Of a stretch of DNA of 64,000 bases, positions 2,717 to 63,198 are shown one piece after another. How positions within the stretch are numbered: position 1 is the first letter of the stretch; every line of letters begins with the position of its first letter. The stretch comes from Octopus bimaculoides (taxonomy: Eukaryota), in assembly GCF_001194135.2 (NCBI RefSeq), contig NC_068998.1, positions 9,018,483-9,082,482 on the forward strand, given 5' to 3'. The notes under the pieces were generated by a model. It was not told where the DNA came from. It saw only the letters and a list, made by a program, of their open reading frames with translations, and did no database searches. The translations under genes and the position numbers were made by a program.

Positions 2717-3328
2717 CTGTATGTATATATATATATACATACATACATGCACATATACAATACAGACATGTGCACACACACACACACACACATAAATATA
2801 TATATTGAAAACGTTGTTTGAATTTGTAAGTTTCTACTATTTCTTAACAGTATTTCTTTAGTGACTCCAAGTGATGTTTACATCTGATCCGTGTGTCTGC
2901 ATTCCAGAGACGTTTAATCTGTTCAAGACACGATAATGTGAGGTATCATTGACCAATGAACAACCCTAAAAGAAAGGTTGATTGATTCCTCATGTTATTG
3001 TTGTTTGTTGGGGATTTTTTTTTTTAACCCTCGAGTCGGTCATCGCGAAGCAGACCTATGATCATAGGGGGATCCTACAGCAGTGACCATTTTGTTTTCA
3101 TAGTTGTTTTTCATTTTCATCTCTTTGCTGCAAATTTCTTGGCGACCCTGCAGGAAATAAGCCAAATACAATGGTTCAATAAATACAACAAGCACTATTT
3201 TGCATCCAGTTAACCTTTATGCAACTGACCTCAGATGAGGACAGTGGGTCAATGTGGGTTAAAACATGATAATGATGATGATTGTTTTCAATTATGATAT
3301 TGTTAAAATTGATGAGTTTATTAAAAAT

Positions 3329-3372
3329 CTTAATCTGTTTTTTTTTTCTTTTCTTTTTCCTTCTAGGTAAGT
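3329..3372 (+). promoter_or_regulatory. Candidate recursive splice site (ratchet point) 1: CTTAAT branch-like motif, 27-nt pyrimidine tract, AG|GTAAGT
   Basis: cttaatctg-ttt...ttccttct-AG(3365-3366)|GTAAGT(3367-3372). Confidence 0.6.
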
Positions 3373-4125
3373 TACACCGATTCAGAATTGGAATGTTTGT
3401 TCTGTATATTGTGGATCTTTTCATTCTTTGGTTCCTCCTCCAAAAACGATGCTCTTTAAACAGAAGGTTTCAAAATATAAACAGACTTTGGCATATTCCT
3501 GTAAAAATATATATATTTATTTTTTCACAATTGTCAATGTGGAGATATTGTTGAAGGTATGTTAATATTTCTGCCACAACCAATAAACCATTATCGTGTG
3601 TTATTTTCTTCATTTCCCTTTCTGATCTCAATTTGAAATTTGTTGTGAATGAATTTGCCTTCCGGGGTGGCTAATGGGGCCTGATAAAAATAAGTAGGCA
3701 AATATAGTTAAGCACCCGCAAGCATTCCTACAATTGCGTTTAGCTTTTGCAGAGAAAAAGATGAAGAGATGGTTTTGTTATAATACCAGACTATTGTGAA
3801 CATATTGAAATTTTTAAGTATCAATAATAGTAGCTTGATTAGAAATATTTATTTTTTCTCTTTTTTCCTTTCTATTAGGATACGCCTTGTGTGTGTGTAA
3901 ATATGTATACACATGCACACATACTGGCTCTGTCTTCTCTTCTGTTATGTCTTGGGTCATCGTTGACAACAACAGATGATATAATAATAATAATAATTAT
4001 AACAATTACGGAGATGTACTTGCATAGCATGTGACTTGATCTGAGATCGAGTGTTGGAACGAAAACAATTGCAGCGTGGGAGGTGTTTATAAGCCATTAT
4101 AATAATGATGAGAAGATGAAGAATC

Positions 4126-4264
4126 TTTTCTACTAAAAGCACAAGGCCTGAAATTTTCTGGGGGGTGGGTACTAGTCGATTATATTGACCCGAGTACGTA
4201 AGGATGAAAGGCAAAGTTGATCCCAACAGAATTTGAACCGAGAACTTAAAGACAGACAAAATGC
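4126..4264 (-). mobile_element. Family B SINE, degraded with internal deletion
   Basis: ggatgaaaggcaaagttgatcccaacagaatttgaacc matches the core of 25595-25810. Confidence 0.75.
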
Positions 4265-4359
4265 ATATATTCGTGCACCCCCCCCACACACACACACACA
4301 AGTATGGCTGTGTGGTTAAGGTTAAGAAGTTCCTTCCCTCACTTTGTGGTTCCTACTAA

Positions 4360-4620
4360 CTTATGGGGGTGTAAACAAACCAACACCATTTGTCAAGTCG
4401 TTGGGGTGATAAAAACAGATACACAAGGATACCCCTTCACACACACAAACACACACTCACACACACATATGATGGGCTTCTTTTCAGTTTCTATCTACCA
4501 AATTCCGTCATAAGGCTTTAGTGAAAAATACAAAATACATTTGGCCTAAGTGCCATGCAGTGAGACTGAACCCAGAACCATATGGGTAGGAAGTAAATTT
4601 CTTACCACACAGCCACGCCT
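4360..4620 (-). mobile_element. Family A SINE: head, internal (CA)n and part of the tail
   Basis: gggcttcttttcagtttctatctaccaaattc...gactgaacccagaacc...cttaccacacagccac. Confidence 0.85.
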
Positions 4621-6310
4621 CTGCATCTTTTTGTCTTTCTTTTTTTTTCTTTTTTTTTGTATATTTATGGAAAACTTGTAATATGAGGGTCAGATGAATA
4701 TAAAGGAATTTTTTCTGAACAAAAAAATGTCTGAGAGGGCGGGGCTACTATATAGTGATAACATTAACCATTTGACCCCTCCCCTCCTCTGTGTACTCCC
4801 TCATCACTTATCTATCAATTTAACCTTTTCCTAAGGGCACAAAGAGACCTACTGAACCTTTCTTGGAATGCCTCTTNNNNNNNNNNNNNNNNNNNNNNNN
4901 NNNNNNNNNNNNNNNNNNNNNNNNNNNNNNNNNNNNNNNNNNNNNNNNNNNNNNNNNNNNNNNNNNNNNNNNNNNNNNNNNNNNNNNNNNNNNNNNNNNN
5001 NNNNNNNNNNNNNNNNNNNNNNNNNNNNNNNNNNNNNNNNNNNNNNNNNNNNNGGTTTTGACCTTTGTATGTTGTTATGATTCTGTTTTGTTTTGTTTGT
5101 GTGTGTGTTTGCATTTATATATTTTTGTTTCTGTGAAGAAGGTGAAGGTGTGGGCGGGTGTTTGCAGAGTGCTCTGACCTTTTGTCTTTTTTAAGGGCTA
5201 GGCTCACTTATGAATGATATTCTAATTAACATATGTATATTGCATTTGGTGTATATGTTGGTATATGTCACTGTGTATGTGTTTTTAATGCATGTGTATA
5301 TATATATATATATATATATATNNNNNNNNNNNNNNNNNNNNNNNNNNNNNNNNNNNNNNNNNNNNNNNNNNNNNNNNNNNNNNNNNNNNNNNNNNNNNNN
5401 NNNNNNNNNNNNNNNNNNNNNNNNNNNNNNNNNNNNNNNNNNNNNNNNNNNNNNNNNNNNNNNNNNNNNNNNNNNNNNNNNNNNNNNNNNNNNNNNNNNN
5501 NNNNNNNNNNNNNNNNNNNNNNNNNNNNNNNNNNNNNNNNNNNNNNNNNNNNNNNNNNNNNNNNNNNNNNNNNNNNNNNNNNNNNNNNNNNNNNNNNNNN
5601 NNNNNNNNNNNNNNNNNNNNNNNNNNNNNNNNNNNNNNNNNNNNNNNNNNNNNNNNNNNNNNNNNNNNNNNNNNNNNNNNNNNNNNNNNNNNNNNNNNNN
5701 NNNNNNNNNNNNNNNNNNNNNNNNNNNNNNNNNNNNNNNNNNNNNNNNNNNNNNNNNNNNNNNNNNNNNNNNNNNNNNNNNNNNNNNNNNNNNNNNNNNN
5801 NNNNNNNNNNNNNNNNNNNNNNNNNNNNNNNNNNNNNNNNNNNNNNNNNNNNNNNNNNNNNNNNNNNNNNNNNNNNNNNNNNNNNNNNNNNNNNNNNNNN
5901 NNNNNNNNNNNNNNNNNNNNNNNNNNNNNNNNNNNNNNNNNNNNNNNNNNNNNNNNNNNNNNNNNNNNNNNNNNNNNNNNNNNNNNNNNNNNNNNNNNNN
6001 NNNNNNNNNNNNNNNNNNNNNNNNNNNNNNNNNNNNNNNNNNNNNNNNNNNNNNNNNNNNNNNNNNNNNNNNNNNNNNNNNNNNNNNNNNNNNNNNNNNN
6101 NNNNNNNNNNNNNNNNNNNNNNNNNNNNNNNNNNNNNNNNNNNNNNNNNNNNNNNNNNNNNNNNNNNNNNNNNNNNNNNNNNNNNNNNNNNNNNNNNNNN
6201 NNNNNNNNNNNNNNNNNNNNNNNNNNNNNNNNNNNNNNNNNNNNNNNNNNNNNNNNNNNNNNNNNNNNNNNNNNNNNNNNNNNNNNNNNNNNNNNNNNNN
6301 NNNNNNNNNN

Positions 6311-51735: not shown

Positions 51736-52510
51736 CACACAGGTGAGCACATAAGTGCATAACAAGGTAGAAAAAATAGCACTTGGATGCCATATATGTA
51801 TATATATATATATCTGACCCTTCATCCATCTCCTCTTTCTCCAATTTGTTCCCTGTCTTATTCCACTCTCTTTTATTTCCTGCAAAATTGCCTTCGAGGC
51901 ATTCAAAGTGGTTTATTCTGATCACAATGACAACAGCAACAACAATAACAGTTTACAATTACAACAGCAAAATTAAAGGAGGACAGAATGTCTAACATAC
52001 AGAATCAGGACAGCAACTGCAACAGCAACAACAACGAGTGCAAGAACAAGAACCAACATGCAACAAGCACTCCAAACCACCTTCTGGGGCCCATTCCATT
52101 TAGTTTCAAAATCATGTACAGCTGACAATATAAAAGTCTTTCCTCAGAGCCATTTCATTGGTGCAGTGTCTTTCCATTCACCTGACCACCCATCCATCCA
52201 AACCTACCTGGTTCTTTTATGGCTTAGCTTTAAACTGTCAACTGGCTTAATTGGTATTTTAGCACCCACTTTTTCCACCCCCATCCCTTTCCGCCATCTC
52301 TCCTTCCAACTCTCTCAACATGGATGGAGAAAGCTTGAGCAGTCATTCTGTTTTGAATGCCTTATCTACCTACCTGATCTTCTTACCTGCCTACTTACCT
52401 GTCTATCTATCCTAGCTTTGTATTTGTCTATATCTATCTGATTATCAACCTATCCTTACCTACCTGTCTGTCTGTCTATCTATCTATCTATATATATATA
52501 TATCTACCTG

Positions 52511-60085: not shown

Positions 60086-60930
60086 TATATGGACACTCAT
60101 ATATACATATATATACACACATATACATATACATGATATATATATATATATATATGGTGTATGTGTATACACACACACATACTTGTATTGGTGTGTGTAT
60201 ATAACCCATCTGTCTGAAACACAAACGAACCAGATGAAACACTACAATCTCCAACAAAGCACCATTGCTGTTACGAAAGCAATAAAAGAATTCTAAGGAG
60301 AGCAATTTGCACAGAATGTACCACGCACGTCGTCATCATTGCTGTCGTCCTCGTGGCCATCGTCGTCATCATCACCATTTCCATGAGCGACAAGCTAGAA
60401 TTAGTTACTTTTAAATCCTGAACGCTACAGAATAATAGCGACTCAAGCACCATCAAAAGTGGCACGGACTCGTGTCTCTTTCTACGGTCTACCTTAAATC
60501 TCTCGCAGTCAAAACACGCGTAAACAATACAGTGACCGACATGGATATCACATTTAAAATTACATGAACGTCAGTTTGGCCAGGCTGCCGAGAGAGAGTG
60601 AGAGAATCTGTGTGGTACTTAGTCTTGCTAGAAATAGCAGTCGAATCTCTCTCTTCCTCTCTCTAATCACACTCTGCTGTTGCGAAAGAAGGACACATTC
60701 GTAGTTGTTGGTACACTATATCTGAAGCATAAACTGACTAATGTAGTCCTAGATACATTATGACTGAGTTACATTATGGGTGATGTAATCCTAGATGCAC
60801 TTAGTCTGAAGGATATCAGCTCATGTAACTTCATTTTGTGTGAAGGACACATTGGATAATGTAGTCCTAGATACATTTAGGCAGAAATATACATTAGATA
60901 ATGTAACTTCACAATGGGTTTTTTTTGTTT

Positions 60931-61298
60931 TTTTTACTTGTTTCAGTCATTTGACTGCAGCCATGCTGGAGCACTGCCTTTAATCAAACAAAATCTCCCC
61001 CAGGACTTATTCTTTGTACGCCTAGTTTTTATTCTATCGGTTTCTTTTGCTGAACCGCTAGGTTACAGGGACGTAAACACACCAACATCGGTTGTCAAGC
61101 AATGATGGAAGGGGACGGGGACACACACACACATATATACGATGGGCTTCTTTCAGTTTCTGTCTACCAAATCCACTCACAAGGCTTTGGTTAGCCCGAG
61201 GCTATAGTAGAAGACATTTGCCCAAGGTTCCATGCAGTAGTAGGACTGAACCCAGAACCATGTTGCTGGTAAGCAAGCTTCTTACCACACAGCCACTC
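60931..61298 (-). mobile_element. Full-length family A SINE, relatively young
   Basis: Complete tail, short (CA)n at ~61120-61140, CORE-like block and head ...cttaccacacagccac. Confidence 0.9.
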
Positions 61299-61592
61299 CC
61301 GGGCCTGTTGTTGTGATATTTGTTTGGTTCTTTCTGTTTAATTAGAAGAAATTGTTGTTAAAAGTACATTGAAACTCTTATGATAAAATAGATATCATTT
61401 TTCATGAAATATGTTTGTGGTGGTGGTAGGCGTGGGGAGCAGAGGTTTGAAGTGGGAAGAGTGTATTTCTGTGTGTGAATATGCTTCTGTATGTGTATAC
61501 ATGTGTGTGTATACCTCTATAGTTTTTGAGAAGGCCATTAGAATAAAAATAGATTTATAAGGTATCAGGTTTTGTGTAAACCAGTGTGTGTG

Positions 61593-61843: not shown

Positions 61844-63198
61844 CATATACACATACATTCGTGGTATTCGTTTGTGAAACACAATAGTGATAAATTCGGG
61901 GCGAATCTTCGGGGACAAGAGAAGTTGCTGCTGCTTGCTTATAATTGAAAATTTTCTTCTGAAGCTTACAATAATGTACTGTTATACTAATAAGATTCTT
62001 ATTAATAAATATATACAATTACCACCATCTACTACTACTAGAATATTTGCTCCTACTATTATTACTACTGCTACTACTACTACTACTACTACTACTAATA
62101 ATAATAATAATAGTAATAGTAATAATAATAATAATGATTCATTGTTTTATTGGCCACAAGGGCTAACAAAAGCAATATGAAATGACAAAACCAGTCAATA
62201 CAAAGGGTTTTAGAAGGTGTAAATGAAATAACAAAGAAGTTGCTGTTTTGAAGATGGTGTTTGGAACTAAAATTAACCTGAAATTTTGGTGGAAGGTTTC
62301 TGTTTCAGCTGCTTTAAAACAGAAAGTGTGTATAGAACAAGGAAACGGTCTCAGGTGGAATGGAATCAAAGGAGTTAGTTAATACAGTGTCTGTGGNNNN
62401 NNNNNNNNNNNNNNNNNGGGGGGGGGTTGTCTGGCTTAGTCACACTTATCCACACACGGACACAACATATGCATAACTCCCTCTCGTTTGCATACATAGG
62501 ACCATCCACACACACACACAGAGCCATCCTCGCACACCCCTTCGGTCTCTTTGACACAGTGGAATTTCCATTGCCAATTTGGGAATTTAGCAGTCAGCTG
62601 TTGTGTGTTCCTTCCTGCAAGTTGAAAAGGATTCAGAGATTTGTTTGATACACAAGCTGTTTTTGGATAACCGTTTAAATAGGCCCCAAGGGAATACCCC
62701 CAGGCCTCTAGTGTAGCATTCATTTCAGCAGGATAATTATCATTTTTTAGTTCAGTACAATATGATCTGGAAATTAATCCCCCCTCCTGCCCCAAATGCC
62801 CATTTGGTACTTAAAAAAATCAGAAACCTACTTTATTCTCTCATCACAGTACCCCACACTGGGTCTATTTCCTGGACCAGGAGACATGGAACTTCAATTG
62901 ACATTACTGTAGTTTACTCAGCTGTAATTAGTATCTGATTGCTGGCACAGCGCTCTTTCTCTCTCTCTCTCTCTTTCTAGGTGTCACATCCTCAGTGTTC
63001 TGCTATAAAATGAATAGATTTCCTCTGAAATAGAGAAATTATGAGTATGTTTTATCTCTCTGCTTTTCTAAGCTTTAGAATAGATTTACTTCAATTCAAT
63101 AACAGAAACTAATTTATAAATTGGATGACTTATGCAACCTACACATAGTTTCAACTGCAAATGATAATAGGCAACAGGTTAATATACATAGATACATG

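What the first reader, a model, noticed from the sequence alone, without database searches (positions are those of the whole stretch)
3329..3372. Candidate recursive-splicing ratchet point 1 (zero-length exon AG|GTAAGT)
Seen: a branch-like CTTAAT, 27 uninterrupted pyrimidines (3338-3364), then TAG immediately followed by the optimal donor GTAAGT. Established: this juxtaposed acceptor|donor is the signature of recursive splicing in long Drosophila introns (e.g. Ubx) and of vertebrate RS sites. Inference: a giant + strand intron is removed stepwise here. I know of no description of recursive splicing in cephalopods but have not checked the literature. By rough hand estimate the bare 8-mer AGGTRAGT could occur once or twice per strand by chance in this window, so the conjunction with the tract and branch is what carries the weight.
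Basis: partly seen in the sequence, partly recalled or inferred. Interest (0 to 1): 0.78.

Follow-up and report, generated by a model that had tools for sequence, protein, structure and literature searches.

The report
Candidate recursive splice site in octopus
The sequence really does place a very strong splice acceptor directly against a strong splice donor, and a second such site lies 25 kb downstream on the same strand. This fits stepwise (recursive) removal of a giant intron in an octopus genome, but I could reach no RNA data, gene annotation or related genomes to test it.

Summary
Observation confirmed base for base: CTTAAT (3329-3334), 27 uninterrupted pyrimidines (3338-3364), TAG (3364-3366), then GTAAGT (3367-3372).

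The window holds only three AGGTRAGT. The two on the + strand both sit directly behind pyrimidine-rich acceptor contexts. The second is TTTCAG|GTGAGT at 28571|28572, 25.2 kb downstream. The single - strand copy does not. This association is unlikely by chance within the window (Fisher p = 0.004), though the test is post hoc.

Both sites meet every sequence-level feature published for Drosophila ratchet points: TT at -5/-6, a branch-like A inside -36..-21, spacing within the published segment range, and a downstream donor defining a stop-filled "cryptic exon".

The + strand is T-rich and pyrimidine-tract-rich, as the sense strand of a long intron would be. No coding exon or protein homologue was found at the site. 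The window is octopus DNA, and I found no paper describing recursive splicing in molluscs.

Transcription, junction reads, lariats and cross-species conservation could not be tested. The verdict is therefore a well-formed candidate, about 0.35-0.4 likely to be a working recursive site. Chance juxtaposition and an ordinary non-coding exon boundary remain live rivals.

The parts
3329..3334 (+). Branch-point-like CTTAAT. The candidate branch A is at 3333, 34 nt upstream of the junction.
   Evidence: It lies inside the -36..-21 window in which Drosophila recursive branch points map. Its use as a branch point is inferred.
3338..3364 (+). Uninterrupted 27-nt polypyrimidine tract with TT at -5/-6
   Evidence: It is one of 30 pyrimidine runs of at least 20 nt on + (9 on -). 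It is one of only three + strand runs of that length followed directly by AG, and the only one followed by a consensus donor.
3365..3366 (+). Acceptor AG (3' splice site, TAG|)
3367..3372 (+). Donor GTAAGT, which would be regenerated after ligation of an upstream exon (the ratchet-point 5' splice site)
   Evidence: Its approximate 5'ss PWM score is 6.4, within the top 0.4% of + strand GT dinucleotides.
3367..3556 (+). Candidate cryptic RS-exon: 190 nt, length not a multiple of 3, stop codons in all three frames, 31% GC
   Evidence: No protein homologue for its longest open frame in 1.84 billion representatives.
3557..3562 (+). Downstream donor AAG|GTATGT, which could define the RS-exon
   Evidence: It is the only donor with PWM score of at least 4 within 400 nt (score 4.9, weaker than the ratchet donor). 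By a rough hand estimate, a donor of this quality within 200 nt has a chance probability of about 0.2.
28542..28571 (+). Site 2 acceptor: branch-like TGTAATAC, pyrimidine tract, and TTTCAG with TT at -5/-6
28572..28577 (+). Site 2 donor GTGAGT, the best-scoring donor on the + strand of the window
   Evidence: PWM score 9.2
28572..28943 (+). Site 2 candidate RS-exon: 372 nt, stops in all frames, ending at AAG|GTAAGC (28944)
31476..31500 (+). Weaker third AG|GT site (cacag|GTATGT, junction 31494|31495). It lacks TT at -5/-6.
   Evidence: Probably chance: about 0.9 such relaxed sites are expected.
3384..3395 (+). AGAATTGGAATG. This 12-mer is found in the window only here and at 28661-28672, each time just downstream of a candidate site.
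   Evidence: Its significance is unknown.

Best explanation
Site 1 (junction 3366|3367) is an intronic recursive splice site, or ratchet point, on the + strand of a long octopus transcription unit. U2AF and U2 would recognise the CTTAAT branch, the 27-nt pyrimidine tract and the TAG. Exon definition would be helped by the downstream donor at 3557. An upstream exon would then be ligated to position 3367, which recreates ...AG|GTAAGT. That regenerated donor outcompetes the weaker donor at 3557 and is used in the next step, so the 190-nt stop-filled cryptic exon is skipped. The next segment would run to site 2 (28571|28572, TTTCAG|GTGAGT) or beyond. What is shown: the motifs, their strength and rarity, their restriction to one strand, the absence of coding potential, and the octopus origin. 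What is inferred: that the + strand is transcribed, and that either site is used at all.
For: - The motif is exactly as described.
- TT at -5/-6 is present at sites 1 and 2; 99.5% of fly ratchet points have it, against 44% of ordinary introns.
- A branch-like A lies at -34 (site 1) and at -24 to -27 (site 2), inside the published -36..-21 range.
- Both + strand AGGTRAGT lie in acceptor-like context and none on - does (Fisher p = 0.0039).
- The 25.2-kb spacing is within the published segment range of 2.6-63.6 kb, mean 18 kb.
- Sites 1 and 2 are among the strongest + strand donors in the window, with site 2 ranked first.
- The sites are not paralogous copies of a repeat.
- Both candidate RS-exons carry stops in all three frames and have intron-like GC, as described for fly cryptic RS-exons. 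The site-1 exon (190 nt) would also shift the reading frame; the site-2 exon (372 nt) would not.
- The ratchet donor is stronger than the downstream donor at both sites, which fits the donor-competition model.
- The + strand has T>A skew of -0.05 in 7 of 8 bins after masking. It also has 41 versus 17 T/A runs of at least 8 nt, and 30 versus 9 pyrimidine/purine runs of at least 20 nt. From my own knowledge, this is what an intron sense strand looks like in other animals.
- No exon-like ORF was seen anywhere in the window.
Against: - There is no transcript, junction-read, saw-tooth, lariat or conservation evidence of any kind.
- The host gene and its strand are unknown, and the window could be intergenic.
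- The statistics are post hoc, on a window chosen because of this motif. By my rough estimate (about 3e-4 long pyrimidine tracts per nt times about 4.5e-5 for the 8-mer), a 2.7-Gb genome would hold some tens of equally good sites by chance.
- GC skew does not show the G>C excess seen on mammalian intron sense strands.
- The AATAAA depletion on + is fully explained by base skew, so it is not independent evidence.
- The 190-nt and 372-nt candidate RS-exons are longer than the roughly 50 nt typical in flies.
- A donor such as GTATGT within 200 nt is not rare by chance.
- In vertebrates most strong motif matches show no detectable use (my own knowledge).
Confidence: 0.37

Rival explanations
1. Chance juxtaposition with no splicing function. 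The + strand of this window is rich in pyrimidine tracts (simple repeats, T runs), and one of them happens to abut AGGTAAGT. Site 2 is a second coincidence.
For: The bare 8-mer is not enriched (3 observed, 4.57 expected). The + strand has 3.5% of 18-nt windows with at least 16 pyrimidines, and 138 acceptor-like AGs. The finding was selected for this property, so the p-values are inflated. A large genome is expected to hold tens of such sites by chance (my estimate). The relaxed third site is at chance level (0.9 expected).
Against: Two of three perfect 8-mers fall in the 3.6% of AGs with acceptor context, both on the same strand (p about 0.004). 0 of 100 shuffles gave two matches. Both sites also carry TT at -5/-6 and a correctly placed branch-like A, which were not part of the selection criterion.
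Confidence: 0.33
2. An ordinary exon boundary rather than a zero-length exon. Either it is the 3' splice site of an expressed non-coding, UTR or poison cassette exon (3367-3556) that merely starts with GTAAGT. Or it is the 5' splice site of an upstream non-coding exon that ends in the pyrimidine tract.
For: The acceptor is very strong, and a donor lies 190 nt downstream, a normal exon length. In mammals hundreds of annotated exons begin with a 5'ss-like sequence (abstract of PMC6224609). Non-coding exons cannot be excluded by ORF or homology tests.
Against: All three frames of 3367-3556 contain stops and its length is not a multiple of 3, so it is not a constitutive coding exon. There are no protein homologues for any frame of 2850-3850 (which has reduced sensitivity) or for the 61-aa frame-c ORF (full HMMER). 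GC is 31%, equal to the intron background. An exon ending in a 27-nt pyrimidine run would be unusual. No upstream exon-like ORF is seen.
Confidence: 0.2
3. The pyrimidine tract is the antisense copy of a decayed poly(A) tail of a retroposon inserted on the - strand, as in Alu exonisation. The AG|GT is then a by-product of the element's 3' end. This concerns origin and could coexist with any of the functional readings.
For: Read on the - strand the tract is AGAAGGAAAAAGAAAAGAAAAAAAAAA, an A-rich tail-like run. The window is full of SINE and LINE fragments.
Against: No other copy of 3365-3800 is found in the window. No target-site duplication of at least 8 nt links 3300-3337 to 3365-4880. No RT or other TE protein similarity is found in the region.
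Confidence: 0.08

Closest known systems
Drosophila zero-nucleotide ratchet points (Burnette 2005; Duff 2015, read here as bioRxiv 10.1101/006163; Pai 2018, PMC6110457; Joseph & Lai 2021, PMC8605326)
   Same: Juxtaposed 3'ss|5'ss around AG|GT, and an unusually prominent pyrimidine tract with TT at -5/-6. A branch A lies about 30 nt upstream. More than one site lies on the same strand, tens of kb apart. A downstream cryptic donor defines a non-coding, stop-filled RS-exon, and the ratchet donor is stronger than that cryptic donor.
   Different: The taxon is a mollusc, not an insect. The -3 base is T (TAG) at site 1, whereas CAG is preferred in flies. The candidate RS-exons are 190 and 372 nt, against about 50 nt in flies. 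No RNA or conservation evidence exists here, whereas the fly sites are defined by junction reads, saw-tooth coverage, lariats and deep conservation.
Vertebrate recursive splice sites with RS-exons (Sibley 2015, as cited in PMC8605326; Blazquez 2018, PMC6224609)
   Same: The same pyrimidine-tract-AG|GTAAGT core. An RS-exon of ordinary exon length is defined by a downstream 5'ss and carries premature stop codons if included. The setting is very long introns in a large genome.
   Different: Vertebrate sites were found in identified long neuronal genes with RNA evidence, whereas here the gene is unknown. In vertebrates only a handful of fully suppressed intronic sites are established, so the motif alone predicts poorly.
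Predicted recursive site in the 230-kb NPF1 intron of the migratory locust (PMC8892266)
   Same: A motif-based prediction in a giant intron of a large invertebrate genome outside Drosophila.
   Different: The locust site was supported by U2AF65 RNA immunoprecipitation. Nothing comparable is available here.

Membership tests
Zero-length-exon recursive splice site (ratchet point) | 3' splice site and consensus 5' splice site juxtaposed at AG|GT | tested here: met
   TAG|GTAAGT at 3364-3372 and CAG|GTGAGT at 28569-28577
Zero-length-exon recursive splice site (ratchet point) | Prominent polypyrimidine tract with TT at -5/-6 (99.5% of fly ratchet points) | tested here: met
   A 27-pyrimidine run with TT at 3361-3362. 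Site 2 has 16 of 18 pyrimidines with TT at 28566-28567.
Zero-length-exon recursive splice site (ratchet point) | Branch point, usually A, 21-36 nt upstream of the acceptor | tested here: inconclusive
   yUnAy-like motifs with A at -34 (site 1) and at -24 to -27 (site 2) are present. Use as a branch point can only be shown by lariat reads.
Zero-length-exon recursive splice site (ratchet point) | Lies on the sense strand inside a long intron (over about 11 kb in flies) | tested here: inconclusive
   No exon was found in 64 kb. The + strand has T>A skew and a 3:1 excess of pyrimidine tracts, consistent with a + sense intron. However, no annotation or RNA data could be reached, and AATAAA depletion is explained by base skew alone.
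Zero-length-exon recursive splice site (ratchet point) | Split reads from an upstream annotated donor to the site, saw-tooth intron coverage, and recursive lariats | not testable with these tools
   No RNA-seq access. Window ORFs are not on record in the assembly collection.
Zero-length-exon recursive splice site (ratchet point) | Motif much more conserved across species than other intronic AG|GT | not testable with these tools
   No cephalopod genome is reachable. The exact 24-mer is absent from JGI metagenomes and GTDB genomes. The P0007 gene is not on record.
Zero-length-exon recursive splice site (ratchet point) | Cryptic RS-exon: a downstream donor weaker than the ratchet donor, with non-coding or frame-disrupting content | tested here: met
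   Donor at 3557 scores 4.9 against 6.4 for the ratchet donor; that exon is 190 nt, with stops in all frames. Site 2 has a donor at 28944 scoring 7.2 against 9.2; that exon is 372 nt, with stops in all frames. Caveats: these exons are longer than the fly norm of about 50 nt, the PWM is approximate and recalled from memory, and such donors are fairly common by chance.
Zero-length-exon recursive splice site (ratchet point) | Often several sites per intron, with segments of 2.6-63.6 kb | tested here: met
   Sites 1 and 2 are 25.2 kb apart on the same strand. The distance includes N gaps of uncertain true size.
Ordinary internal protein-coding exon starting at 3367 | An open reading frame from acceptor to donor, and similarity to known proteins | tested here: not met
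   Stops in all three frames of 3367-3556. 0 hits for the 61-aa frame-c ORF in 1.84 billion representatives. 0 hits for all ORFs of 2850-3850 (the sensitivity of concatenated queries is doubtful).
Antisense retroposon tail providing the pyrimidine tract (Alu-exonisation-like) | Element body adjacent to the tail, target-site duplication, and other family copies | tested here: not met
   No in-window copies and no direct repeat of at least 8 nt flanking the region. Genome-wide copy number is not testable.

The most novel reading that the evidence does not exclude
Octopus removes giant introns by Drosophila-style zero-length-exon recursive splicing, with several ratchet points spaced about 25 kb apart in one intron of more than 60 kb. 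This would be the first case in a mollusc or any lophotrochozoan. It would imply that recursive splicing is either ancestral to bilaterians or arises repeatedly wherever introns become very long.
Probability: 0.3. Interest if true: 0.6.

Novelty: new member of a known kind. Interest (0 to 1): 0.42.

Why it matters
Recursive splicing has been demonstrated experimentally in Drosophila and vertebrates, and predicted in a locust. I found no paper in the searchable library that describes it in any mollusc or cephalopod; only incidental co-mentions came up. Cephalopods have very large, repeat-rich genomes and long neural genes, so how they splice giant introns accurately is a real question. A validated ratchet point in octopus would extend the mechanism to the third great bilaterian branch. 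It would also give a simple motif for finding more sites. The mechanism itself would not be new, and a single unvalidated motif match is only a lead.

Tried and rejected
1. Exact look-ups of window ORFs (82, 209 and 90 aa) in the assembly collection, to obtain the source record, neighbouring genes or orthologous contigs, found nothing on record. The same was true for the O. bimaculoides protein P0007.
2. A protein search with all ORFs of 2850-3850, concatenated, gave no hits.
3. A protein search with 94 composition-ranked ORFs from the whole window (4979 aa), meant to find any annotated exon and thus the host gene and its strand, also gave no hits. It failed its built-in positive control: the RT fragment that scored 9e-14 was not recovered. 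This negative is therefore uninformative, and it lowers trust.
5. Rfam and tRNA scans of the window, looking for intronic snoRNA or miRNA that would give the host strand, found nothing.
6. Exact-match scans of JGI metagenomes and GTDB genomes for the 24-mer across the junction gave 0, as expected for animal DNA.
7. SINE orientation as a strand indicator gave 12:5, which is not significant, and the element's own polarity is unknown.
8. AATAAA depletion on + looked supportive (53 versus 81) but is fully explained by the A/T skew (expected ratio 0.67, observed 0.65), so I dropped it as independent evidence.
9. The retroposon-tail origin has no TSD and no paralogues.
10. One literature search was badly framed and returned irrelevant papers.

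Full report
**1. The observation**

Reading the window confirms every element at the stated coordinates:
- CTTAAT at 3329-3334;
- an uninterrupted 27-nt pyrimidine run at 3338-3364;
- TAG at 3364-3366;
- GTAAGT at 3367-3372.

No AG lies between the branch-like motif and the acceptor. The bare 8-mer AGGTRAGT is not enriched: 3 copies on both strands against 4.57 +/- 2.24 in shuffles.

**2. How unusual the conjunction is**

The three AGGTRAGT copies are at 3365 (+), 28570 (+) and 52393 (-). Both + strand copies sit directly behind a pyrimidine-rich acceptor. The second reads TTTCTTTCTATTTCAG|GTGAGT. The - strand copy follows a purine-rich GATA repeat.

- A pattern of 12 pyrimidines plus NYAG|GTRAGT, allowing 2 mismatches, finds these two sites. 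The expectation is 0.12, and 0 of 100 shuffles reached two.
- I counted all AG dinucleotides. Acceptor-like context means YAG preceded by at least 13 of 18 pyrimidines. On the + strand 138 of 2757 AGs have it; on the - strand 97 of 3702 do.
- Two of the three perfect sites fall in that 3.6% (Fisher p = 0.0039; Poisson 2e-4 to 5e-3 depending on the background).
- A relaxed scan allowing one donor mismatch adds a third + strand site (cacag|GTATGT, 31494|31495) and none on the - strand. About 0.9 such relaxed sites are expected by chance, so I give it no weight.

These tests are post hoc, because the window reached me on account of this motif. My own rough estimate multiplies about 3e-4 long pyrimidine tracts per nucleotide-strand by about 4.5e-5 for the following 8-mer. 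That leaves some tens of equally good chance sites in a genome of a few Gb.

**3. The surroundings**

- The window is AT-rich (about 34% GC), carries 22 N gaps (5166 N) and is full of microsatellites.
- It contains SINE-like repeats, a mariner-like fragment and LINE fragments.
- A repeat in the window is 90% identical at protein level to the repeat-derived C-terminal tail of a UniRef protein from Octopus bimaculoides. The DNA is therefore from that octopus or a near relative.
- The 1.2 kb around site 1 is single-copy within the window.
- Sites 1-3 share only the core AGGTNNGTTA and are not copies of one element.
- I found no exon-like ORF anywhere. No ORF has protein-like composition (best log-likelihood 10.9 bits). 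None of the acceptor-to-donor ORF candidates looks like a real exon.
- Rfam and tRNA scans were empty.

**4. Is site 1 the edge of an ordinary exon?**

The only good donor within 400 nt downstream is AAG|GTATGT at 3557. The resulting exon, 3367-3556, is 190 nt, not a multiple of three, has stops in all three frames and is 31% GC.

- Its longest open frame (61 aa) has no relative among 1.84 billion representative proteins searched with full HMMER.
- A concatenated query of every ORF in 2850-3850 also found nothing.
- A later concatenated query failed to recover a known positive. I therefore treat the negative as weak.

An ordinary coding exon is thus excluded by direct reading. A non-coding, UTR or poison exon is not excluded.

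**5. Comparison with the defining features of ratchet points**

The features come from Duff et al., Joseph & Lai and Pai et al..

- **Juxtaposed sites:** met.
- **Prominent pyrimidine tract with TT at -5/-6:** met at sites 1 and 2, not at site 3. In flies 99.5% of ratchet points have it, against 44% of ordinary introns.
- **Branch A at -36..-21:** candidate A at -34 (site 1) and at -24 to -27 (site 2).
- **Several sites per intron, with segments of 2.6-63.6 kb (mean 18 kb):** sites 1 and 2 are 25.2 kb apart.
- **Cryptic RS-exon closed by a donor weaker than the ratchet donor, with non-coding content:** 6.4 versus 4.9 at site 1 and 9.2 versus 7.2 at site 2. These come from an approximate PWM that I wrote from memory and used only for ranking. 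Both exons have stops in all frames. They are longer than the fly norm of about 50 nt.

The features that actually define membership could not be tested. These are junction reads, saw-tooth coverage, lariats, cross-species conservation, and location in a sense-strand long intron.

**6. Is the + strand transcribed?**

The evidence is indirect only.

- After masking simple repeats, the + strand has T>A skew of -0.05, negative in 7 of 8 bins and zero in one.
- T runs of at least 8 nt outnumber A runs 41 to 17. Pyrimidine runs of at least 20 nt outnumber purine runs 30 to 9.
- TTTTAG and TTTCAG are enriched on the + strand somewhat beyond what the base skew predicts (p = 0.04 and 0.07).

From my own knowledge, this is the pattern of the sense strand of long introns in other animals. 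Three points count against reading too much into it. The G/C skew is absent. The AATAAA asymmetry is fully explained by the base skew. Replication-linked or repeat-driven asymmetry could give the same picture.

**7. Mechanism proposed**

An upstream exon of a + strand gene is spliced to 3367, using the branch near 3333, the 27-nt tract and the TAG. Recognition is helped by exon definition across 3367-3556. The junction recreates a consensus donor (AG|GTAAGT), which is used in preference to GTATGT at 3557. The cryptic exon is therefore discarded, and the next intron segment is removed up to site 2 or beyond.

All steps after "the motifs are there" are inferred. I put this explanation at about 0.37. 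The rivals are:
- chance juxtaposition, about 0.33;
- an ordinary non-coding exon boundary, about 0.20;
- origin from an antisense retroposon tail, about 0.08. This has no TSD and no paralogues.

**8. Novelty**

Full-text searches pairing recursive splicing with cephalopod, octopus, mollusc or squid found only incidental co-mentions. Outside flies and vertebrates I found a motif-based prediction in locust backed by U2AF65 RIP. If validated, the site would be a new member (new phylum) of a known kind of element, not a new mechanism.

**9. Verdict**

The finding is a correctly observed and well-formed candidate. A second site and the strand context strengthen it, but it is unproven. The decisive data are gene annotation, total RNA-seq and alignments to other Octopus genomes.

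Noticed in passing
window 3384-3395 and 28661-28672 (+): The exact 12-mer AGAATTGGAATG occurs only twice in the window. The copies lie 18 nt and 90 nt downstream of candidate sites 1 and 2, inside the candidate RS-exons. The flanks are otherwise unrelated. It could be chance (roughly a few per cent by my estimate) or a shared splicing regulatory element.
   Followed up: partly
window 27.9 kb (-), 36.7 kb (+), 48.5 kb and 54.4 kb: A repeat family translating as ...SMLAWVGRFD..LQLDALPNAN... is 90% identical to the C-terminal tail of an O. bimaculoides UniRef protein named Liprin-alpha CC2 domain-containing protein (P0007). That tail is probably a repeat-derived, mis-annotated terminal exon.
   Followed up: partly
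window 22483-22907: A mariner-type transposase N-terminal fragment on the + strand (...FCVKIGKSAMETL..SGRPTMS...), degraded by stops and frameshifts. I recognised it from my own knowledge of the motif. It gave no database hit.
   Followed up: no
window about 29663-29845 (-); about 35.0 kb (+); about 51.4-51.9 kb (-): LINE fragments. One is a reverse-transcriptase piece (hits to PF00078 proteins at 50-65% identity). The other two are ORF2 C-terminal tails (..LDxFLSxIPxEP..).
   Followed up: partly
window, e.g. 13755-14179, 60921-61339, 35427-35800 and at least 14 other places: A SINE-like family of about 420 bp at 70-90% identity, with 12 copies in one orientation and 5 in the other. It is often flanked by TG/TA microsatellites.
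   Followed up: partly
window 62953-62986 (+): A 26-nt CT-rich pyrimidine run followed by TAG|GTGTCA. The acceptor side looks the same as at site 1, but the donor is poor (PWM -1.8), so it is not a credible recursive site.
   Followed up: yes
window 52370-52470 (-): A cluster of strong donor-like motifs (CAG|GTAAGT, CAG|GTAAGA, CAG|GTAGGT) lies inside a GATA/GACA simple repeat on the - strand. It shows how low-complexity sequence can generate consensus donors by chance.
   Followed up: no
tool behaviour: Long concatenated pseudo-protein queries to the word-indexed protein search lose sensitivity. A fragment that hit at 9e-14 in a 271-aa query was not found when embedded in a 4979-aa query. Negatives from such queries should not be trusted.
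   Followed up: yes
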